Sequence record: PP496439.1
Strand: one strand, 5' to 3'
DNA: 64,000 bases
Position numbers and translations under genes: made by a program. The notes under the pieces are model-generated. The model made no database searches. It was not told where the DNA came from and saw nothing but the letters and a program-made list of their open reading frames with translations. Shown piece after piece: positions 5,260 through 48,916 of this stretch. The first letter of the stretch is position 1; every line of letters starts with the position of its first letter.

Positions 5260-6957
5260 ATGAAACACAATCCACAAGTCACGCGCCTTTCCGCCTTGGC
5301 TGCTGCCGGTATCAACGTCAAGTCAGGCTCGCCGGTAGATGTCGTGCACCAGCACACTCGCACTCTGGGCAACAACATCGACAAGTTGAGCACGCCTCGT
5401 CAGTGGGCCATTGCTCATCTGATGAACGAAGCGGCCGACCTGCTGGTTGTAGAAACTGGCAGCCTTCAAGACGACTACATCGACTACTTCAAAGGTGCAC
5501 TGGAGAAGTTCGGTGTGTCCTCCCCGGCGGAATTGACCCAAGAGAAGGCTTCCGAGTTCTTCAACTGGATCAGCGACAACTGGAAGAAAGGTGAAGGCCC
5601 GAAAGAAACGGCAGGCGCCTTCAACTCCGACAAGTCTCGTCGTACCCTTCGTGATCAGCTTACGGCGGTATTGAGTCTCTCCGGCTCGAAACGTAAGTCT
5701 TTTGTGGCGCAAGTACTCAAGACGGCCAAAGCTGAAGGCACCACTATCCCCGAGCCTCAGATGTATGATGATCGCGGGCTCACTGCGTGGATGAACTCGA
5801 AAGTAACTGATCTTCAGCTCACTCAAGATGTACTCACCGACATGGGTGTACTGAAGTGGGCAGAAGAGTCGGAAGCCAACGTGGAAGTTGAAACCGCCAG
5901 TCAGTTCTCCTTCGTCAAAGTCACCCAGAACGGTAACACGTATCGTCTGGAAGCGTCGGACACCGGTAACTTCAAATCCGTCATGATCTGGAAAGGCGGC
6001 ATGTGGACGAAGCCAGGTCCGGACGAAGCGTTCAAGGATAAAGAGCCACACCGCATGCTGGGTGCCCTGCGCACGCCCAACGGTGCAGAACTGGCTACCC
6101 TCAACCTGCCGGAAACCCCAGTGGCAAGCATGGAAGAGATGGCCGAGCTGTTCGGCGCCATGGGTATCGAAGAGAGCGAGATCCGTCGCTTCTACGGCGG
6201 TGGTCCAGAGTGGAATGATCGCAGCGTCTACGATGGCAACATCCCGAGCGTATCCCCGGCCAATCTGGGCGTGAGCCCAACTTACGCCTACACCGACATG
6301 CACCCGCTGCGTGCTTACGAGGCAGAGGACACCATCCGTATCAACGGTCTGGATGCCACGTTGCAATCCATCGACAACGGGCAGGCTGTGTTCACGGTTG
6401 ACGGCGTAGATACCACCACGGTGCCGCTGGACAACATCGTGGTCGCTGAAGGTGAAGCCTCGGTAGTAGCCACCGCCATGGTATCTCATCGCGTACTGGT
6501 CACTGCTGGTCACGAAGACCTGACTCAGTACAAGTCGCTGCGTCACGACTTCGAGGCTGTTACTGCGAACCACCAAGAGCTGTCACAAGTCAAGGTAGGC
6601 CCGGCGCTGCAAACCCTCGCCAAGGCGGGTAACCGTCGCGCTCTGGTACTGGCCCACGCCGGTGTGCAGCGTATCAACGAAGGTCATGCACTGCTCAAAG
6701 CCTCCATCGGATATGGCAAGGAAGCGGCGACCGCCAGTGTCATCACAGAGCTGGCCGATCTGAACAACCTGTGTGGCAAGGATCAGGTGTCGGCACAAGA
6801 CGTGATCGACTCCGCGCCGGTGGTCACTCATCTGAAGCAGGGCGAGTTCAAGGCCGACATGCCGGACGTGGTTGACTCTTCGGACTTCGAGCTGAACGAT
6901 CCGCAAGCCGAACAGGCGTCCACGCGCAAGAGCCGCTTCCCAAGCCGCAAGCGCTAA
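5260..6957 (+). CDS. Hypothetical head-module (probable virion) protein
   Basis: GGAG RBS; lies between portal and protease; several ETA(S/G)/ATA motifs shared with neighbours. Confidence 0.65.
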   Translation: MKHNPQVTRLSALAAAGINVKSGSPVDVVHQHTRTLGNNIDKLSTPRQWAIAHLMNEAADLLVVETGSLQDDYIDYFKGALEKFGVSSPAELTQEKASEFFNWISDNWKKGEGPKETAGAFNSDKSRRTLRDQLTAVLSLSGSKRKSFVAQVLKTAKAEGTTIPEPQMYDDRGLTAWMNSKVTDLQLTQDVLTDMGVLKWAEESEANVEVETASQFSFVKVTQNGNTYRLEASDTGNFKSVMIWKGGMWTKPGPDEAFKDKEPHRMLGALRTPNGAELATLNLPETPVASMEEMAELFGAMGIEESEIRRFYGGGPEWNDRSVYDGNIPSVSPANLGVSPTYAYTDMHPLRAYEAEDTIRINGLDATLQSIDNGQAVFTVDGVDTTTVPLDNIVVAEGEASVVATAMVSHRVLVTAGHEDLTQYKSLRHDFEAVTANHQELSQVKVGPALQTLAKAGNRRALVLAHAGVQRINEGHALLKASIGYGKEAATASVITELADLNNLCGKDQVSAQDVIDSAPVVTHLKQGEFKADMPDVVDSSDFELNDPQAEQASTRKSRFPSRKR

Positions 6958-7004: not shown

Positions 7005-9026
7005 ATGACAATCAAGAGTGCTACGTTTGCGGAAGCTGAATCGCAAGCTCAAGGCCTAGCCAACTCCATGGGATGGCCGGGTGAGGTAATGGACAACGGT
7101 GACGGCACTGTCACTCTGTCGCCACCCGACGCATGGGACGATGAAGAGAACCCCGGCAAGGTGGCAGCGTCCAAGCTGACCGGCAACAAGGACTGTCACG
7201 TCTTCGCCAGTATGGTGGTGCCCAGTGAAGGTGAGTGGATGGCTGTCGTCATTCAAGGTACCCCAGCGCTGGTACTCATCGACCAAGGATCTGGTGAAGG
7301 CTGGTTGACCCTACAGGCCCCTGCGGACTTCGATGTCCCGGAGAGCGTGCTGATTCCTTTCCAACAACGCCTGACCCAAACGGAAACCGCTTCAATGGAT
7401 ATCGATCAAAACGTAGAACTGGCAGCAGGTAAGAAAGCGTCCGAGGTAGACGTATTGCTCAAGCTGCGCGCTGAGTACGACAGCATCAAGACGGCTAAGT
7501 CCCGCGTAGGAATCTTGCGCGCCAAGAAACCAGCCGAATACAAAAAGAAAGTAGCGGATCTGAACAAGCGGGAAGAAAAGCTGAAAGCTGCTATCGAAAA
7601 GATTATCCCGTCAGGCCGTATGCCTTCGCACGACAGTTTGGTTCGCCGTAAGGCAGCAGAGGCTGGCAAGCCCGTAGCGCCTGTTAAGCGGGTGAGTAAG
7701 GAGGATAAGGATAAGGCCGCGAAGGATCGAATCCACCAGAACATGCTTCAAGATTCCAAACGTACCAGCGATACGGTCAAGAAGCATGGTGTCTCCGAAT
7801 CAGAAGCCCGCACTTTGCACCGGGGCAAGTACCCCAAATCTTACATGCAGGCTGAAAAGGATCTGGATGAGCTTACCCACAAGCTAAAAGATCCGGACCT
7901 TACTGATGCGCAGGAAGCCAAGCTGGAAAAAGAGGTAAAGGAACGTCGGGCGCAACTGAAGTCGAAGAAAAAGAAATATGATGCCGTCCTCAAGGAAACA
8001 GAGGAATCCTCGGTTAAGCCGGTCACTCGTACTCAAGTTCTGGCTAACGTATCCAGCGACCCGGCCACTCCTGATTATCAGGAAGCCTCGATCACTGGTG
8101 TTACGCCGGAAGGTAACATCTCAGTAGCGTTCGCTGACGGTGACATCGGTGTGTACCAAGGTAAGTTCGACCCGGCTGGCCTTATGCCAATCGCGGAAGC
8201 GGCAGGCGTTGAAGTTGCCAGCTTCAAACACCACACCATGGTTCTGGCCAACGTTGGCACTGCGGCAGCACCTGAATACGCCGAAGCTGAGGTGGTTGGT
8301 TCCACCGAGGAAGGCCATCTGGAAGTCGCTTTCGCCGATGGTGACGTGGGTATCTACCGTTCCTTGTTCCACCCTACCGGTATCTTACCGCTGGGTGTGA
8401 CTGCCGAGACGGCCAGTGTGCTCATCGAGGTAGCTGCACGTACGGCAATGAGCCCGGAGCAGAAGCTCAAGCGTGCTGAGGACCTGCTCAAGCTGCGCAT
8501 CCTGCACGACAAGTACGAGACCAACACCGACGCCCTGAAAGGCAAGAAGGGTCCGGACAATAAAGCCAAGCGCGACAAGAACAACGCTGACAAGGTGAAG
8601 CTTCGTGCCAAGCTGGACAAGATGGGTGTCACGTCGCTGCCGAGCAAAGCTCACCTGCAGCGTACCATCAAGCAGCACAGCGATCTGCCGACTCGTATGC
8701 GTGCATCGGACAAGAAGCCAGCCGTCAAGCCGGGGGCTAAACCCGCTGCTAAGAAGCCAGCGGCTAAGAAAACTATCGTAAGCCTCAATGACGATATCAA
8801 GCTTGCCAAGTCACGGTTGAAGTCTGCCAAGTTAAGGGGGGATGAAAGTACCATCAAGCATGCAGAGGCTCAGATTGAAAAGTGGACCGACGAGCTGAAT
8901 GATCTGCTCAGGGCCAAAGGGCATGATATCCCTGTTCGCAAGAAACCAGCTGCAAAGGAAGCACCTGCCTCTAACACTCGGGAAGTTAACCGAATGGCCA
9001 AAATGATGAAGAAGTACAAAGGCTAA
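7005..9026 (+). CDS. Lys-rich putative internal head protein with two Tudor/SH3-like repeats (VLANV...VAFADGD)
   Basis: CAGGA RBS 8 nt before ATG 7005; internal repeat at 8025-8393; histone-H1-like KKPA tracts. Confidence 0.7.
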   Translation: MTIKSATFAEAESQAQGLANSMGWPGEVMDNGDGTVTLSPPDAWDDEENPGKVAASKLTGNKDCHVFASMVVPSEGEWMAVVIQGTPALVLIDQGSGEGWLTLQAPADFDVPESVLIPFQQRLTQTETASMDIDQNVELAAGKKASEVDVLLKLRAEYDSIKTAKSRVGILRAKKPAEYKKKVADLNKREEKLKAAIEKIIPSGRMPSHDSLVRRKAAEAGKPVAPVKRVSKEDKDKAAKDRIHQNMLQDSKRTSDTVKKHGVSESEARTLHRGKYPKSYMQAEKDLDELTHKLKDPDLTDAQEAKLEKEVKERRAQLKSKKKKYDAVLKETEESSVKPVTRTQVLANVSSDPATPDYQEASITGVTPEGNISVAFADGDIGVYQGKFDPAGLMPIAEAAGVEVASFKHHTMVLANVGTAAAPEYAEAEVVGSTEEGHLEVAFADGDVGIYRSLFHPTGILPLGVTAETASVLIEVAARTAMSPEQKLKRAEDLLKLRILHDKYETNTDALKGKKGPDNKAKRDKNNADKVKLRAKLDKMGVTSLPSKAHLQRTIKQHSDLPTRMRASDKKPAVKPGAKPAAKKPAAKKTIVSLNDDIKLAKSRLKSAKLRGDESTIKHAEAQIEKWTDELNDLLRAKGHDIPVRKKPAAKEAPASNTREVNRMAKMMKKYKG

Positions 9027-9047: not shown

Positions 9048-9806
9048 ATGAACGTGTTTGAAATGATTGCCCAGCAGAACGCCGCGATGAAACCCATCGA
9101 CGTGCACAAGCTGGTTAAAGGCAAGGATGTAGATCCAAAGCTCAAGGAGATGACCACAGCCAAAGTCGGTATGCCCGGCTTGGCCCAGGCCATTACGTTC
9201 GCGGAGTGGTTGCCGTTCGCGGCCAAGACGTATCACTGCTCGCCGGATCCGAAGGATTACATTCTGGTCCCGAACATCGTGATGCCATCGGAGATCCCCA
9301 ACCGGAATGGCGTGGGCTTCCCCTTGCAGCAACTGGTACGCTTCAACCCCGAGACTGGTTGCCAAGGCTTCCGTACGGCAGTCGGCAAGGGTACGTACGC
9401 GGACCACCAGAACAACACCGTCGCCCCGCTGGCGAAAGGCGTGATCGTGGATTCGTTCATGCGTCCGCTGGAAGGCTTCAAGGGCGGCGTGTGGAAGTTG
9501 CTGTTCCTCTTGGCGTACGACCGGTCCAAAGACCAAGCGCTCACCAACGCCATCTTGGCGGGCACTCGTACCAACTACAGCATGGGCGCCTACCTGACCA
9601 AGTACACGTGTTCCATCTGTGGCCGGGATCGGGGTCAGTGTGTGCACTTGAGCGCGCAGAAAGGTTCGGTGAACTTCCGCAAGGTAGGGAACCAGCTGGC
9701 GTACTCGCAGGCATACGAACCAATTTTCTTCGAGACGTCCTCGGTAGAAGATCCGGCTTTCGTATCGTCGATCACCGGCGCTGACCACCTGCTTATCACT
9801 CGGTAA
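9048..9806 (+). CDS. Probable prohead (maturation) protease
   Basis: YADH...GVIVD, NYSMG (candidate catalytic Ser), CSICG..C.H insert, FFETSSVEDPAF; position in the head module. Confidence 0.65.
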   Translation: MNVFEMIAQQNAAMKPIDVHKLVKGKDVDPKLKEMTTAKVGMPGLAQAITFAEWLPFAAKTYHCSPDPKDYILVPNIVMPSEIPNRNGVGFPLQQLVRFNPETGCQGFRTAVGKGTYADHQNNTVAPLAKGVIVDSFMRPLEGFKGGVWKLLFLLAYDRSKDQALTNAILAGTRTNYSMGAYLTKYTCSICGRDRGQCVHLSAQKGSVNFRKVGNQLAYSQAYEPIFFETSSVEDPAFVSSITGADHLLITR

Positions 9807-10002: not shown

Positions 10003-10035
10003 GCCCGCTCTGGCAAACGCTGGGGCGGGCTTTTT
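10003..10035 (+). terminator. Rho-independent terminator
   Basis: GCCCGC/GCGGGC stem followed by TTTTT. Confidence 0.8.
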
Positions 10036-10083
10036 CGTATCTGCTAATTACAAAACATGGATAAATAAATTGGAAGATGGGAC

Positions 10084-11295
10084 ATGATCAAATTCGTGGA
10101 GATATCCGCACCTAGTTCGGACTTCGCCAAGACCCTCAAGAAAGGCATACGGGTCGTGGTTAACATGGGATCTACGAAGGAACCGTCCTATTGGATGGCG
10201 ACTGTAGCAAAGAACAATGCAGCGAAGGGCACCGTCAACCTGAACTTCGATGATGGAGACGTGGCCGAGTACAAAGCTATCAAGTCCAAGGTGGGTATTG
10301 TCGGGATCGGAGTTGCCAAAGTCCGCAAGACTGAAATCCCATTGTCTCAGGTTGGCAAGTGGCTTACTAGTGAGGAAACTACATCACCGTCCTCCTACCT
10401 GTCTGACCCTGTCCAGAAGTTTTTAGCTAAGTGGGTAGACTCCTTTGATAAGGACGGGGCCAATCCTTCAAATAAGAAATACTTGTTAAAGACAATGAAG
10501 GACTTATTACCTAGCATACCCGAAGAGTATAGAAAACATACGGGTATCCTTTTCCGAGGGGTTAGGCTACCAGTAGAAGCTGTAACTTCTATCCTCGCGG
10601 GTTCTCGACTAAAATTTAAAGATGAGTTCATTTCGTATTCCTCCGATAGAGATGCTGCTGTAAAATTTGCGGCCTACGTAGACTATGATAAAGGAAAAGA
10701 ACAAATAGGGATAGTAATAAAAGAGGATAGTAACTCTGTTGCGGTTAATATCTTTGAGGTATGGGATAACATCTCGTCAAAGTACAAAGATATACATTCT
10801 CAATCATTTGTAGATGAGGAAAAAGAAGTAGTACTTCAAAACTTCAACCTGGGACTAGCTACTTCACAGATTGATATGCTACTTATATCTAAAGGTAAAA
10901 TAAAATCATTAGGGAAGCAGGAGCCTCCCGGCTGGAATAAGTTTCTTAAATCAAGTGGAATACTTAAAGACATATATTGCATTCCCAACACTAAAGATAA
11001 TATTAAGGGTGTACAAGAAGTCCTTAGTTTGAACACGACAACTCTTATGAATCCGCAGAAGATGTCGGCTATACTAACCAAACTAGGATTTCCTAAATCT
11101 AACGGGGAAACATTTAGGACGGTGTACCTTCCTGACCTAGAGCTTTCTATAAAAGCGTCTATGGTTCCTCAAGGAATACTGTTCGAGACTGGTAAGGGCT
11201 GGCGATTTGCCAAGTTTGAGTATAAACAGGTAGGGATAGCAGAGGATGAAGCATCCGCTATCAATTTATTTAATATGATAGTCAAACAAAGATAA
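10084..11295 (+). CDS. Chimeric protein: N-terminal Tudor-like phage module plus R-S-E class ADP-ribosyltransferase domain
   Basis: LFRG, FISYSSDRDAA and EEKEVVL motifs; GC falls to about 30-38% in sampled lines after ~10420; N-terminus 68% identical (56/82 aa) to a segment of the next gene. Confidence 0.75.
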   Translation: MIKFVEISAPSSDFAKTLKKGIRVVVNMGSTKEPSYWMATVAKNNAAKGTVNLNFDDGDVAEYKAIKSKVGIVGIGVAKVRKTEIPLSQVGKWLTSEETTSPSSYLSDPVQKFLAKWVDSFDKDGANPSNKKYLLKTMKDLLPSIPEEYRKHTGILFRGVRLPVEAVTSILAGSRLKFKDEFISYSSDRDAAVKFAAYVDYDKGKEQIGIVIKEDSNSVAVNIFEVWDNISSKYKDIHSQSFVDEEKEVVLQNFNLGLATSQIDMLLISKGKIKSLGKQEPPGWNKFLKSSGILKDIYCIPNTKDNIKGVQEVLSLNTTTLMNPQKMSAILTKLGFPKSNGETFRTVYLPDLELSIKASMVPQGILFETGKGWRFAKFEYKQVGIAEDEASAINLFNMIVKQR

Positions 11296-11298
11296 TAG

Positions 11299-11328
11299 TT
11301 GCACGGGCTGTTTTGGGTGTGCTATAAT
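11299..11328 (+). promoter_or_regulatory. Sigma70-type early promoter (TTGCAC-18-TATAAT, extended -10)
   Basis: TTGCAC 11299-11304, TGC-TATAAT 11323-11328; near-duplicate of the promoter at 48888. Confidence 0.75.
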
Positions 11329-11381: not shown

Positions 11382-13034
11382 ATGGCCAGATTGACCCTAG
11401 CAACCGTTAACGCCGAGATCGCAAAGTCCGGTGGCAAAGAAACTCTGGTCAAGGGTAAGGCCTACTTCTACTGGATAGGTGGCCGTGCCGACGCCGATCC
11501 TCAAATCTGGACTTCCATTTACGTTGCTGCGCTAAACCAGATGACGCTGGCCCAGTGGCTGGAAGACTGGAAGCGCAATGACGACCAATACAACAAACCT
11601 ACTCCCGACAAGGAAACCCGCAAAATGGCTATCAGACACGTTCAGACCCTCGCAGCTCCTACTAAATCCGGTAAGACGGCATCTGCCAACCCAGCACTGG
11701 AAGCAGCCGAAGCTGAACTTAAAAAGGTTCAGAGCACCATTCAGGGTTTCAAAGCCCGTGGCCTGGTCCCTACTTCCCCGTGGGAAAGGAAACTCAAGGA
11801 CGCTAAGGCGGCTGTGTCCGCTGCCAAGAAAAAGAAGACCACTGCTGCTCCTGCACAGGAGACTGCTTCCCCGGCTACCGACTTCGCCAAGTCGTTGAAG
11901 AAGGGCGTTCGTGTACTGGTCAATCTCGGCAACACCAAAGAACCGTCCTACTTCCTCGGCGCCATCACCAAGAACAACGCCAGCAAGGGTTCGGTCAACG
12001 TGCTGTTTGACGACGGCGACGTTGCAGAGGTACGTGCGATCAAATCCAAGGTCGGCATCGTGGGCATCGCTATCGATAAGGTGCGCAAGTCGGAAGTTCC
12101 TGCTGCCCAGATCAGCAAGTGGCTGGCCGGTGCAACGCCAGCGACCAAGGTACCCGTAGAATTCATTCCGGTACCTACTCCGGTAGCTGAAATCCCCGAC
12201 GCAGGTCTGGAACAGGTTATTCAAGCCATACTCAAGCGTAGTGTATCGGGTGCCCTGTCAGTGGAGAAGACGCATAAAATGGACTTTACCAAAGAGGCCA
12301 TGCCTAAAGCTATGCGTACTAACTACCTGAGCGTAGCGAAAAAAGCAGGGGTGAAGACTGCTACCTTCGATAATAAATCCCAGAAGTGGGTACCAGATGG
12401 ACTTGCAACGGTTCCGGTTATCCCAAAAGCAGGTAAGTCCAAACCATTCAGCCCAGCGGAAGCCCGGAAGGTAATCGGTGCTATCCCCGGCTGGAAGGCA
12501 TCCAACGTGAAGAACAAAGCGTCGGCCACGTTCACCAAAGATTACCCGAACGGTGTAACTGCTACCGCATTGATCTTCCCGACTCACGTTACGTTCAATT
12601 ATCCTCAAGGTGAGAACGATCACGTCGGCGACTTGTCCAAGATCCCAGCCTATATCCAACAGATCGACGAGGATCAAGCCGCACCAGTAGAAGACGGCAA
12701 AGCACTGGATGATCTGGCCAAGGCATTGAAGGGCTGGCCGAACAAGGTCCTCCCACGGGATGCTGACGAAGACAACTTCCTGCTGCGCGGGTTTGAAGAT
12801 GATGACCTTCCGGCTGATGTGGAGCCAACCGCTGACGCCATCGAAGCACATGCAATCTCGATCTTCAAGAAGATGAAAAGTGTTGACAACTTCAAGAAGA
12901 GCAAGATGTACCACGGCGACAACACATACTCCTTCTCGGCTGGCGGCACCGTGGGCTACGTGTACTTCGATGAAGATGGCGTCGGCATGGTCCGGGCAAC
13001 CCCGTTCCAAGAGTCCACGCCGGGAAAGTCCTAA
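11382..13034 (+). CDS. Multidomain Lys/Ala-rich hypothetical protein containing the Tudor-like module
   Basis: GAGGA RBS supports ATG 11382; shared module at 11880-12125. Confidence 0.8.
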   Translation: MARLTLATVNAEIAKSGGKETLVKGKAYFYWIGGRADADPQIWTSIYVAALNQMTLAQWLEDWKRNDDQYNKPTPDKETRKMAIRHVQTLAAPTKSGKTASANPALEAAEAELKKVQSTIQGFKARGLVPTSPWERKLKDAKAAVSAAKKKKTTAAPAQETASPATDFAKSLKKGVRVLVNLGNTKEPSYFLGAITKNNASKGSVNVLFDDGDVAEVRAIKSKVGIVGIAIDKVRKSEVPAAQISKWLAGATPATKVPVEFIPVPTPVAEIPDAGLEQVIQAILKRSVSGALSVEKTHKMDFTKEAMPKAMRTNYLSVAKKAGVKTATFDNKSQKWVPDGLATVPVIPKAGKSKPFSPAEARKVIGAIPGWKASNVKNKASATFTKDYPNGVTATALIFPTHVTFNYPQGENDHVGDLSKIPAYIQQIDEDQAAPVEDGKALDDLAKALKGWPNKVLPRDADEDNFLLRGFEDDDLPADVEPTADAIEAHAISIFKKMKSVDNFKKSKMYHGDNTYSFSAGGTVGYVYFDEDGVGMVRATPFQESTPGKS

Positions 13035-13147
13035 GTCCCGCTAAGGGACAGACCCAAGACGAGCTGAAAGCTTTCTGTCGACAGATAGGGTTGTGGGTTT
13101 CCGGTTCTAGCGTAGCCCCTAGGAACTATCGTATCTACGACGGGGGT

Positions 13148-13339
13148 ATGGAAGGTAATAAGAAAGTGTTGGATGTAGTTCTGGGCGATGAGTTTATGGC
13201 TAACGCTGATGGATCAGGCAACAGTTATGATCGACTCCTCGATAAACTGAATGCCTTGAGCGACAAGAAGTTCATCGTCAGTCCTTGCGCTGGGGTGTAT
13301 GGAAACGTCGGTCAAGATCTGACCGGATTGTCCTACTGA
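13148..13339 (+). CDS. Small hypothetical protein (63 aa)
   Basis: GGGGG RBS-like run before ATG; protein-like composition; flanked by hairpin-rich sequence. Confidence 0.5.
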   Translation: MEGNKKVLDVVLGDEFMANADGSGNSYDRLLDKLNALSDKKFIVSPCAGVYGNVGQDLTGLSY

Positions 13340-13452
13340 GCCAGATACGGTAAATGATCCATGTATCGGAGGTACCGGGGCTAGATTCATAGCTGGTTCC
13401 GGGAGTCACCCTAAGAGGTGTAGGGTCAAAGGGTTTAACCCCCTTAGGTTTC

Positions 13453-13488
13453 GTCCGCGCTTTCCTTACCGATTGCGCGGACTTTTTT
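13453..13488 (+). terminator. Rho-independent terminator
   Basis: GTCCGCGC/GCGCGGAC stem plus T6. Confidence 0.8.
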
Positions 13489-13514
13489 ATCTGCAAAATA
13501 TATTCGAAAATAAA

Positions 13515-13544
13515 TTGTACACAATGATGCCCACGTGCTATACT
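13515..13544 (+). promoter_or_regulatory. Sigma70-type early promoter (TTGTAC-18-TATACT, TGn, AT-rich UP region)
   Basis: Direct inspection; GTGCTATA core shared with the promoters at 11299 and 48888. Confidence 0.65.
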
Positions 13545-13615
13545 GGAATCACGGGGGCGTGATGCCCCACCAATACCGGCCCGAACGGCCACCACTGTCC
13601 CAAGAGGAATGCACC

Positions 13616-13933
13616 ATGCCAGCGATGAAGCCTAAGACCACCCCAAGTGAACGCGACATCCAGATTGCGATCAGCCAACTGGAAAATTTGAAGCTGGTAG
13701 CGATGGGTGAGATGGATCCGGTATATCGCGATGATCTGCAGTCGTGGCTGGCCGACTGGTATCCAGACTTTTCGTGGAACCCTAACCAGTCAAGCGTTCA
13801 GATTCAAGCGATGGTTAGCCTTCCAGAGTTCGCTGACATCGAATTAAATCTTAACCGTCGGTATGATGTAGACTTCTACAAAGAGTTGGCTGACGGCGTA
13901 GCAGAGTCCTGTGACTATCCACTCTCGCGTTGA
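13616..13933 (+). CDS. Hypothetical early protein
   Basis: CACTGTCCCAAGAGGA leader/RBS before ATG 13616. Confidence 0.75.
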   Translation: MPAMKPKTTPSERDIQIAISQLENLKLVAMGEMDPVYRDDLQSWLADWYPDFSWNPNQSSVQIQAMVSLPEFADIELNLNRRYDVDFYKELADGVAESCDYPLSR

Positions 13934-48887: not shown

Positions 48888-48916
48888 TTGCACGGGGTTT
48901 TTTCGTGTGCTATAAT
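48888..48916 (+). promoter_or_regulatory. Sigma70-type early promoter (TTGCAC-17-TATAAT, extended -10)
   Basis: Near-duplicate of the 11299 promoter, including the downstream GCACCATGGCAC. Confidence 0.8.

What the first reader, a model, noticed from the sequence alone, without database searches (positions are those of the whole stretch)
10084..11295. Low-GC ADP-ribosyltransferase grafted onto a native phage module
Seen: the first ~95 codons are phage-like (~52% GC in a sampled line) and duplicate a module of the next gene. From ~10420 the DNA drops to ~30-38% GC with A/T-ending codons and encodes R (LFRG), S-x-S (ISYSS) and E-x-E (EEKE) motifs. Known: R-S-ExE ARTs (cholera-toxin-like; T4 Alt/ModA/ModB) usually modify Arg, and Alt is virion-injected. 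Inference: recent in-frame capture of a foreign effector behind a loading module, making this a swappable effector slot for host takeover or anti-defence.
Basis: partly seen in the sequence, partly recalled or inferred. Interest (0 to 1): 0.7.

Follow-up and report, generated by a model that had tools for sequence, protein, structure and literature searches.

The report
Mosaic phage gene with ADP-ribosyltransferase fold
A Pseudomonas putida jumbo phage carries a recently acquired, low-GC accessory gene in its head-assembly gene block; it joins a small module shared with its neighbour genes to a probable NAD-dependent protein-modifying enzyme, a new variant of the known theme of phages that carry such enzymes with their head genes.

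Summary
The window is Pseudomonas phage vB_PpuM-Amme-1 (PP496439.1). ORF 10084-11295 (Amme1_00010, 403 aa, intact) has an N-terminal ~95-aa module that is 57% identical to residues 165-260 of the next gene. Its remaining 299 codons are 38.6% GC against 55.0 +/- 2.7% for the window.

The cargo matches no Pfam, NCBIfam, PHROG, PADLOC or PDB sequence model. Its few distant relatives conserve [YF]-R-G, S-x-[ST]-[ST] and E-x-E. In a moderate-confidence AlphaFold model these lie on strands 1, 2 and 5. About 47 of the 50 best PDB fold matches are ADP-ribosyltransferase-superfamily proteins.

The whole gene, N-module included, is a ~1.25 kb insert between a terminator and the next promoter. Four of nine sister phages carry it, and presence varies within one species.

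The N-module is an old paralogue of the neighbour's module (62% nt identity), not a fresh copy. No alternative cargo occupies the slot.

Two of three distant homologues also lie in the terminase-portal-protease block. One of them carries a different N-module that again matches its downstream neighbour.

Verdict: probable divergent ART effector, plausibly head-associated. It is a new variant of a known kind. Enzyme activity and packaging were not tested.

The parts
9048..9806 (+). Head maturation protease gene (backbone context; upstream neighbour of the slot)
   Evidence: PHROG 18299, E 5.9e-62. It is 38% identical (E 2e-57) to the gene directly upstream of cargo homologue P0002 in L005.
10003..10030 (+). 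Intrinsic-terminator-like hairpin plus T-run after gp9; backbone, conserved in all relatives compared
   Evidence: 12-bp stem with 9 GC pairs. The sequence is identical in carrier and non-carrier phages.
10039..11295 (+). Insert of about 1.25 kb that replaces about 33 bp found in non-carrier phages (junctions are fuzzy by a few bases)
   Evidence: DNA alignments of Amme-1 and SKa-4 against KoPa-5 and Peetri at both junctions. No flanking direct or inverted repeats.
10084..11295 (+). gp10 CDS (Amme1_00010), 403 aa, intact
   Evidence: Intact in all four carriers, with 13 variable residues.
10099..10383 (+). N-terminal beta-rich module (residues 6-100), paralogous to the gp11 module and the gp6 repeats; near-native GC
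   Evidence: The AF2 model has five strands with core pLDDT 65-75. Weak Tudor-type Pfam hit, E 0.033. Fold search inconclusive.
10402..10923 (+). ART-fold-like catalytic domain (residues ~107-280), low GC; R158 at 10555-10557, S184 at 10633-10635, E248 at 10825-10827
10924..11292 (+). C-terminal tail (residues 281-403), low GC; residues ~331-386 (11074-11241) resemble a cassette in Pori-4 gp11
   Evidence: BLASTP E 1e-5, 37% identity over 59 aa. Local phmmer E 0.005. Model confidence is low here.
11299..11328 (+). Promoter-like element of gp11 (TTGCAC, 18-nt spacer, TATAAT), backbone; starts 3 nt after the gp10 stop
   Evidence: A second copy lies at 48888-48916.
11382..13034 (+). gp11 (Amme1_00011), carrying the paralogous module at 11859-12146
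   Evidence: The module is under strong purifying selection (pN <= 0.023, pS up to 0.27).
8013..8399 (+). Two tandem diverged copies of the same module inside gp6 (8013-8195 and 8205-8399)
   Evidence: hmmsearch E 8.4e-7 for the whole ORF. BLASTP E 8e-5 to gp10. Alignment A5.

Best explanation
gp10 is an intact, recently acquired accessory gene of a subset of the Amme-1-like jumbo phages. It encodes a three-part mosaic protein. The first part is a ~95-aa beta-rich module of the kind found in the neighbouring gp11 and gp6 proteins. The second is a ~175-aa domain of a rare, phage-restricted, highly divergent family with the ADP-ribosyltransferase fold and an R / S-x-S / E-x-E active site. The third is a tail containing another small gp11-type cassette. 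Most likely the enzyme uses NAD+ to ADP-ribosylate a host macromolecule early in infection; the E-x-E form suggests a protein arginine. The shared modules most likely tie it to the same partner or assembly as gp11 and gp6. Given its position in the terminase-portal-protease block, that assembly is most plausibly the prohead interior, so the enzyme would be ejected with the DNA. Shown: composition shift, mosaic structure, insert boundaries, patchy distribution, remote homology, and the predicted fold with motif placement. Inferred: catalysis, target, packaging and timing.
For: Composition and mosaic structure. Insert boundaries. The gene is present in 4 of 9 phages and varies within species cluster 3A (bioRxiv 10.1101/2024.03.26.586772). 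It is intact with invariant motif residues in all carriers. Synonymous divergence is 0.010-0.041 in gp10 against 0.068-0.132 in gp9 and the protease. Distant relatives P0002-P0004 keep R-G, S-x-[ST]-[ST] and the catalytic E. The AF2 model places R54, S80 and E144 (cargo numbering) on strands 51-59, 78-82 and 144-148. In the Foldseek PDB search, about 47 of the top 50 hits belong to the ART superfamily (PltA, pertussis-like S1, Tpt1/KptA, TreX, Vis, ScARP), with probabilities up to 1.0. The Foldseek viral library gives a phiN3 protein at E 5.7e-7 plus named ModB, Alt, 'ADP-ribosylase' and minor-capsid fusion proteins. hhalign links the family to the phiN3/phiM12 proteins at probability 95.8%, E 7.8e-9, with the motifs aligned. 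Context: P0002 lies directly after the protease homologue, and its N-part is paralogous to the next gene (E 7e-12). P0003 lies directly upstream of the portal gene. Published survey: phage ARTs are often encoded beside terminase, portal and capsid genes or fused to head proteins, and about 44% lie in contexts that suggest head packaging (PMC9503650).
Against: No curated sequence model of any ART family matches, even at E <= 10. The model has mean pLDDT of only 61.7 and comes from a 4-sequence alignment. No PDB fold hit reaches E < 1e-3. There is no virion proteome for these phages. gp11 and gp6 have no characterised homologues, so their being head proteins is itself an assumption. gp11 has a consensus-like sigma-70-type promoter, which is unusual for a late structural gene. 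gp10 lies between a strong terminator and that promoter, with no recognisable promoter of its own. In Vibrio phage GR7B the module-bearing genes lie far from the portal gene. pN/pS in the cargo is about 0.2-1 from small counts, which is weaker constraint than in the protease.
Confidence: 0.55

Rival explanations
1. It is an ART-fold enzyme, but it is not packaged. It would be made inside the infected cell like the later T4 Mod enzymes. The shared N-module would serve for target recognition or for complex formation with gp11 rather than for head loading.
For: gp11 has a sigma-70-type consensus promoter. In Vibrio phages the module-bearing proteins lie beside DNA ligase and NudI genes, far from the portal gene, and one carries an SprT-like protease. 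P0004 lies beside topoisomerase genes. P0003 and P0004 have no long N-module.
Against: Three of four cargo-family members lie inside the terminase-portal-protease block. The phiN3 relative lies beside baseplate and tail-tube genes. The published trend is for head-cluster ARTs to be packaged (PMC9503650).
Confidence: 0.27
2. It has the ART fold but a different chemistry. It would modify DNA, RNA or a small molecule, or simply hydrolyse NAD+, rather than ADP-ribosylate a protein arginine.
For: Fold matches include Tpt1/KptA RNA 2'-phosphotransferases, the guanine-specific ScARP and a DarT entry. P0004 has N-K-E instead of E-x-E.
Against: Three of four family members, and the phiN3/phiM12 proteins, keep E-x-E. 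The best PDB hits are protein-modifying toxin subunits.
Confidence: 0.15
3. It is a selfish or decaying passenger. On this reading the gene is a recently recombined moron with little or no function in these phages, possibly not expressed.
For: It lies between a terminator and the next promoter with no promoter found. It is dispensable in 5 of 9 phages. pN/pS reaches about 1 in some pairs.
Against: The gene is intact in all four carriers, and the catalytic residues and the N-module are conserved (N-part pN <= 0.008). The same architecture is maintained at native GC in a distant phage.
Confidence: 0.1
4. It is not an ART at all. The three short motifs would be coincidental and the fold matches an artefact of a low-confidence model.
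For: No sequence-model hit. Mean pLDDT is 61.7 and PDB E-values are >= 4e-3.
Against: The motifs are invariant columns across lineages below 30% identity. ART-superfamily proteins fill almost the whole hit list in two independent libraries.
Confidence: 0.15

Closest known systems
Phage T4 Alt (head-packaged, injected ART) and the related ModA/ModB enzymes
   Same: It is a phage-encoded R-S-E-type ART fold. ModB, Alt and 'ADP-ribosylase' entries of T4-like phages appear among the fold matches. The proposed mode of action is the same: delivery with the DNA and modification of host proteins (PMC9503650).
   Different: There is no sequence-level similarity; fold hits are only E 3.7e-3 to 3e-2. The N-terminal part is different, the phage lineage is different (PaBG/Lu11/phiRSL1-related), and packaging was not shown here.
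ART domains fused to head proteins: MuF-fused polymorphic toxins (PMC5576092) and polyvalent proteins (PMC5512222)
   Same: The architecture is an N-terminal virion-associated module followed by an exchangeable C-terminal enzyme. A 'minor capsid protein' and a 'head morphogenesis domain' protein are among the fold hits.
   Different: There is no MuF domain (Pfam gave no hit) and no downstream immunity gene inside the insert. The phage is a lytic jumbo phage, not a temperate one. There is only one enzymatic domain. The N-module here is a paralogue of the neighbouring gene.
Sinorhizobium phage phiN3 / phiM12 167-aa hypothetical proteins (PHIN3_124, SmphiM12_169)
   Same: These are the closest detectable family: Foldseek E 5.7e-7 with TM 0.62, and hhalign probability 95.8%, E 7.8e-9, with the three motifs aligned. 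Their gene is also located among structural genes.
   Different: They are stand-alone catalytic domains with no N-module or tail. They are themselves uncharacterised and match no Pfam ART model.
Metagenomic homologue P0002 on contig L005 (Logan SRR26188684, 150 kb)
   Same: Same cargo family (E 6e-18). Same position directly after the head maturation protease. Its N-terminal part is paralogous to the next, large gene.
   Different: The N-module is unrelated in sequence to the Amme-1 module. The gene has native GC (57% against 58.5%). It lacks the long C-terminal tail.

Membership tests
R-S-E (cholera-toxin-like) ADP-ribosyltransferases | Split beta-sheet ART core fold | tested here: met
   In the AF2 model (core pLDDT 73-83) about 47 of the top 50 PDB matches and many named viral matches are ART-superfamily proteins. 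Confidence is moderate: PDB E-values are >= 4e-3.
R-S-E (cholera-toxin-like) ADP-ribosyltransferases | Arg on strand 1, S-x-S/T on strand 2 and (Q/E)-x-E at the start of strand 5, in that order | tested here: met
   R158, S184-x-S186 and E246-x-E248. R, the first S and the last E are invariant columns in alignment A3 and align with the phiN3/phiM12 family. They fall on strands 51-59, 78-82 and 144-148 of the cargo model.
R-S-E (cholera-toxin-like) ADP-ribosyltransferases | Significant match to a curated ART sequence model or to a solved ART by sequence | tested here: not met
   Pfam, NCBIfam, PHROGs, PADLOC and PDB sequence and profile searches returned no ART hit. The only traces are Exotox-A_cataly at E 0.044 for P0002 and DRAT at E 0.16 for the phiN3 protein, both below threshold.
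R-S-E (cholera-toxin-like) ADP-ribosyltransferases | NAD+ binding and ADP-ribosyl transfer | not testable with these tools
   No biochemical data exist for this protein or for any member of its family.
Head-packaged, injected phage ARTs (T4 Alt type) | Protein present in purified virions and processed during head maturation | not testable with these tools
   The description of these phages contains no virion proteome.
Head-packaged, injected phage ARTs (T4 Alt type) | Homology to Alt/VIP2-type ARTs | tested here: inconclusive
   Fold-level hits only: ModB E 3.7e-3, Alt E 2.9e-2. No sequence-level hit.
Head-packaged, injected phage ARTs (T4 Alt type) | Gene embedded in, or fused to, head morphogenesis genes (criterion used in PMC9503650) | tested here: met
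   The gene lies between the head maturation protease and gp11 in the terminase-portal-protease block. The same holds for P0002 and P0003.
MuF-fused polymorphic toxins of temperate phages | N-terminal MuF (SPP1 gp7-like) domain | tested here: not met
   No Pfam hit to any MuF model. The N-module is a ~95-aa beta-rich domain.
MuF-fused polymorphic toxins of temperate phages | Cognate immunity gene immediately downstream | tested here: not met
   The insert carries only gp10. The backbone gp11 promoter starts 3 nt after its stop.
Tudor/SH3-like small beta-barrels (for the N-module) | Five-stranded barrel with a significant match to a Tudor-type model or structure | tested here: inconclusive
   Five strands are predicted. 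Pfam BAHCC1-like Tudor hits are E 0.033 and 0.016, below the cut-off. The best Foldseek E is 0.018 to unrelated folds, and the SMN Tudor domain ranks 42nd with TM 0.65.

The most novel reading that the evidence does not exclude
In the PaBG/Amme-like large phages, the proteins encoded around the portal and prohead protease may share short exchangeable 'address' modules that specify co-assembly with a resident neighbour protein. Any enzyme domain that acquires the locally valid module would then be recruited. The module differs between phages but always matches the downstream neighbour: Amme-1 gp10/gp11, and L005 P0002 with its 827-aa neighbour. This would be a general plug-in code for loading foreign effectors, distinct from MuF or portal fusions.
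Probability: 0.22. Interest if true: 0.7.

Novelty: new variant of a known kind. Interest (0 to 1): 0.48.

Why it matters
Phage ARTs reprogramme or disarm the host in the first minutes of infection, and head-cluster-encoded ARTs are thought to be injected with the DNA. This locus adds an ART-like family that every curated sequence library misses. It also offers a natural comparison, because near-identical phages exist with and without the gene. Finally, it gives a hint, repeated in a distant phage, that such effectors are recruited through a module copied from a neighbouring protein. If that holds, it would explain how large phages take up foreign effector domains, and it would give a rule for finding hidden cargo proteins in unannotated jumbo-phage genomes.

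Tried and rejected
Sequence-model searches of the whole protein and of its pieces found nothing usable: Pfam at E <= 10, NCBIfam, PADLOC, PHROGs, and PDB by phmmer and by profile. A PADLOC ZorE/HNH trace at E 0.032 was judged to be noise.

Three IMG/VR scans found no relatives.

The N-module fold search was inconclusive, so I keep 'Tudor-like' as tentative.

I looked for signatures of insertion and found none: no flanking direct or inverted repeats. I looked for a promoter carried by the insert and found no sigma-70-like site, and the AT-rich motif at 10060-10070 does not recur in the window.

I looked for a recent-duplication origin of the N-module and rejected it: 62% nt identity, pS 0.85. 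I looked for alternative cargo behind this exact module in 5.8 billion proteins and found only gp10 and gp11 homologues. I looked for characterised homologues of gp11 and gp6 and found none.

I considered a homing-endonuclease or mobile-intron explanation for the low-GC island and rejected it, because there is one continuous ORF with an ART-like core.

The pattern searched was copied from the window itself.

Full report
IDENTITY AND OBSERVATION

The window is the left end of Pseudomonas phage vB_PpuM-Amme-1 (PP496439.1, 202 kb, host P. putida), and window coordinates equal record coordinates. It belongs to the 'G3' jumbo-phage cluster described in bioRxiv 10.1101/2024.03.26.586772. By portal similarity, the cluster is distantly related to the Vibrio phage GR7B, PaBG, Lu11, phiRSL1 and Erwinia/Dickeya jumbo phages.

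The finding's ORF, 10084-11295 (+), is annotated as hypothetical protein Amme1_00010 and is called gp10 here (403 aa).

- Residues 6-110 align to residues 165-271 of the next ORF (gp11) at 57% identity, E 7e-38.
- Codons 1-100 have 50.0% GC (GC3 0.62). Codons 105-403 have 38.6% GC (GC3 0.37).
- 900-bp windows across the 64 kb average 55.0% with SD 2.7%. The cargo is the lowest by far; the next lowest window is 49.4%.

WHAT THE INSERT IS

DNA alignments with sister phages show that the whole gene, N-module included, is an insert of about 1.25 kb (about 10039-11295). It replaces about 33 bp between the conserved gp9 terminator (hairpin 10003-10030) and the conserved gp11 promoter-like element (11299-11328), which starts three bases after the gp10 stop. 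There are no flanking repeats.

Four of the nine sister phages carry the gene at 97.5-100% protein identity: Amme-1, Pori-4, SKa-4 and Illi-2. Five lack it: KoPa-5, Voja-6, Aura, Lauda and Peetri. Aura is placed in the same species cluster (3A) as the carriers Illi-2 and SKa-4. The carriers also fall on two different gp11 backbones, each shared with non-carriers.

Synonymous divergence among carriers is lower in gp10 than in most flanking genes:

- gp10: 0.010-0.041
- gp9: 0.087-0.132
- protease: 0.068-0.096
- gp11 module: 0.055-0.208
- first 95 codons of gp11: 0.023-0.078, which overlaps the gp10 range

Together with the un-ameliorated GC, this supports a recent arrival that has spread by recombination. 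The counts are small.

The gene is intact in all four carriers, and the motif residues are invariant.

THE N-MODULE

The module also occurs as two tandem, more diverged copies in gp6 (8013-8195 and 8205-8399). It occurs at 36-47% identity at several places in the Vibrio phages GR7B and GR11A.

In the nine gp11 homologues it is almost invariant at the protein level (pN <= 0.023 while pS reaches 0.27), although the segments on both sides are swapped cassettes.

The gp10 copy is only 61.8% identical in DNA to the resident gp11 copy, with saturated synonymous divergence (pS 0.85). It is therefore an old paralogue, or comes from an unsampled related phage. It is not a fresh copy of the neighbour, and where the fusion arose cannot be told.

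A search of 5.8 billion proteins found the module only in gp10 and gp11 homologues.

Its fold is unresolved. The AlphaFold model shows five strands with core pLDDT 65-75. Two sub-threshold Pfam Tudor-type hits were found. The fold search was inconclusive.

THE CARGO

No curated library recognises the cargo. A full HMMER scan of 1.84 billion cluster representatives found only the Pori-4 orthologue and three metagenomic proteins, at 27-29% identity in that scan:

- P0002, E 6e-18
- P0003, E 3e-7
- P0004, E 3e-4

In their alignment the invariant columns include R54-G55, S80 and E144 in cargo numbering, which are R158, G159, S184 and E248 of gp10. The motifs read [YF]-R-G, S-x-[ST]-[ST] and E-x-E; P0004 has N-K-E.

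An AlphaFold model built on these four sequences has mean pLDDT 61.7, with 73-83 over the core. It puts the Arg on strand 51-59, the Ser on strand 78-82 and the Glu at the start of strand 144-148, preceded by two helices.

- Foldseek against the PDB returned about 47 ART-superfamily entries among the best 50: PltA, pertussis-like S1, Tpt1/KptA, the Rhs toxin TreX, Vis, cholera-like A1, ScARP and a diphtheria-toxin homologue. Probabilities reached 1.0, but E-values were only 4e-3 or weaker.
- Foldseek against the viral library gave a 167-aa protein of Sinorhizobium phage phiN3 at E 5.7e-7 (TM 0.62). It also gave named ModB, Alt, 'ADP-ribosylase', a Gordonia-phage ART, and minor-capsid and head-morphogenesis fusion proteins.
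- P0002 independently hits the same phiN3/phiM12 proteins weakly by sequence.
- A profile-profile comparison of the two families gives probability 95.8%, E 7.8e-9, with all three motifs in register.

I conclude that the cargo is very probably (about 0.8) a divergent R-S-E-type ART-fold domain of a rare, phage-restricted family. Catalysis has not been tested.

THE TAIL

Residues 281-403 are poorly modelled. Residues ~331-386 resemble a cassette present only in Pori-4 gp11 (BLASTP E 1e-5; local phmmer E 0.005). That cassette has native GC. So gp10 is bracketed by gp11-type pieces on both sides, which points to a related, lower-GC phage as the donor rather than a bacterium.

CONTEXT IN DISTANT PHAGES

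On the 150-kb contig L005 (GC 58.5%), P0002 lies directly after a homologue of the Amme-1 head maturation protease (38% identity, E 2e-57). The gene order there is the same: portal, protease, then cargo.

The N-terminal part of P0002 is unrelated to the Amme-1 module, but it is paralogous to residues 477-540 of the next, 827-aa gene (E 7e-12). Its GC is native.

On L006, P0003 lies directly upstream of the portal gene (E 1e-105 to the Amme-1 portal). P0004 lies beside topoisomerase genes. The phiN3 relative lies beside baseplate and tail-tube genes.

In Vibrio phage GR7B the Amme-type module precedes an SprT-like metalloprotease domain (Pfam E 2.5e-9), far from the portal gene.

MECHANISM

The best-supported reading is a phage ART effector that acts on a host macromolecule early in infection. 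It would be tied by its shared modules to the same partner as gp11 and gp6.

Head loading and injection is the most plausible route. It is favoured by the position in the head-gene block in three independent lineages, and by the published survey showing that phage ARTs are often encoded beside terminase, portal and capsid genes or fused to head proteins (PMC9503650).

Several points argue against it:

- There is no virion proteome for these phages.
- gp11 and gp6 are uncharacterised.
- gp11 has a consensus-like sigma-70-type promoter.
- gp10 itself sits between a strong terminator and that promoter, with no promoter I could recognise.
- The Vibrio-phage module genes are not near head genes.

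The rivals are a non-packaged intracellular ART, a different substrate chemistry, a poorly expressed passenger gene, and no ART at all. Each is scored in its own section.

COMPARISON AND NOVELTY

Head-associated phage ARTs (T4 Alt), ARTs fused to MuF or portal domains, and polyvalent proteins are established kinds (PMC9503650, PMC5576092, PMC5512222).

This case differs in four ways. Its ART family escapes all curated models. It has no MuF domain and no immunity gene. Its N-module is paralogous to the neighbouring gene. And a distant phage repeats that last arrangement with a different module. I rate it a new variant of a known kind, of moderate interest.

The 'swappable slot' idea is not shown at this locus, which is only filled or empty.
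Noticed in passing
window 7005-9026 (gp6); repeats at 8013-8195 and 8205-8399: gp6 holds two tandem diverged copies of the gp10/gp11 module and Lys/Ala/Pro-rich low-complexity stretches. Its length varies from about 465 to 735 aa among the nine sister phages.
   Followed up: partly
window 11382-13034 (gp11); alignment A4: gp11 homologues combine conserved N- and C-terminal domains and a near-invariant module with swapped cassettes on both sides of the module. Pori-4 has an extra ~125 aa, part of which resembles the gp10 tail.
   Followed up: partly
window 11299-11328 and 48888-48916: A nearly identical promoter-like element (TTGCACGGG ... TGTGCTATAAT) occurs twice in the window, against 0.02 expected by chance. 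It lies before gp11 and before Amme1_00061.
   Followed up: partly
L008 6836-8785 (Vibrio phage GR7B_00088): The same small module (residues 56-145) is fused in front of an SprT-like metalloprotease domain (Pfam E 2.5e-9). The module occurs at 3-4 places per Vibrio phage genome.
   Followed up: partly
window 13035-13933 and the homologous spots in L002, L003, L004, L009: The gene after gp11 differs between sister phages: a 105-aa gene in Amme-1 and SKa-4, and a 164-aa gene in KoPa-5, Peetri and Pori-4. It is preceded by a ~580-bp stretch with no annotated gene. It is not strictly linked to gp10 presence.
   Followed up: no
window 5260-6957 (gp5): gp5, between the portal and gp6, also varies strongly in length among the sister phages (roughly 476-731 aa). 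It has a weak match to Vibrio phage GR7B_00089.
   Followed up: no
L005 12816-14741; L006 5712-7574; L008 10085-11983: An NAD-dependent-type DNA ligase gene lies a few genes downstream of the cargo or module locus in L005, L006 and both Vibrio phages. Whether this is more than conserved gene order is unknown.
   Followed up: no
L013 4935-5438 (Sinorhizobium phage phiN3 PHIN3_124) and L014 235-738 (phiM12): These 167-aa hypothetical proteins, encoded beside baseplate and tail-tube genes, appear to be unannotated stand-alone ART-fold proteins with the same R / S-x-T / E-x-E motifs.
   Followed up: partly
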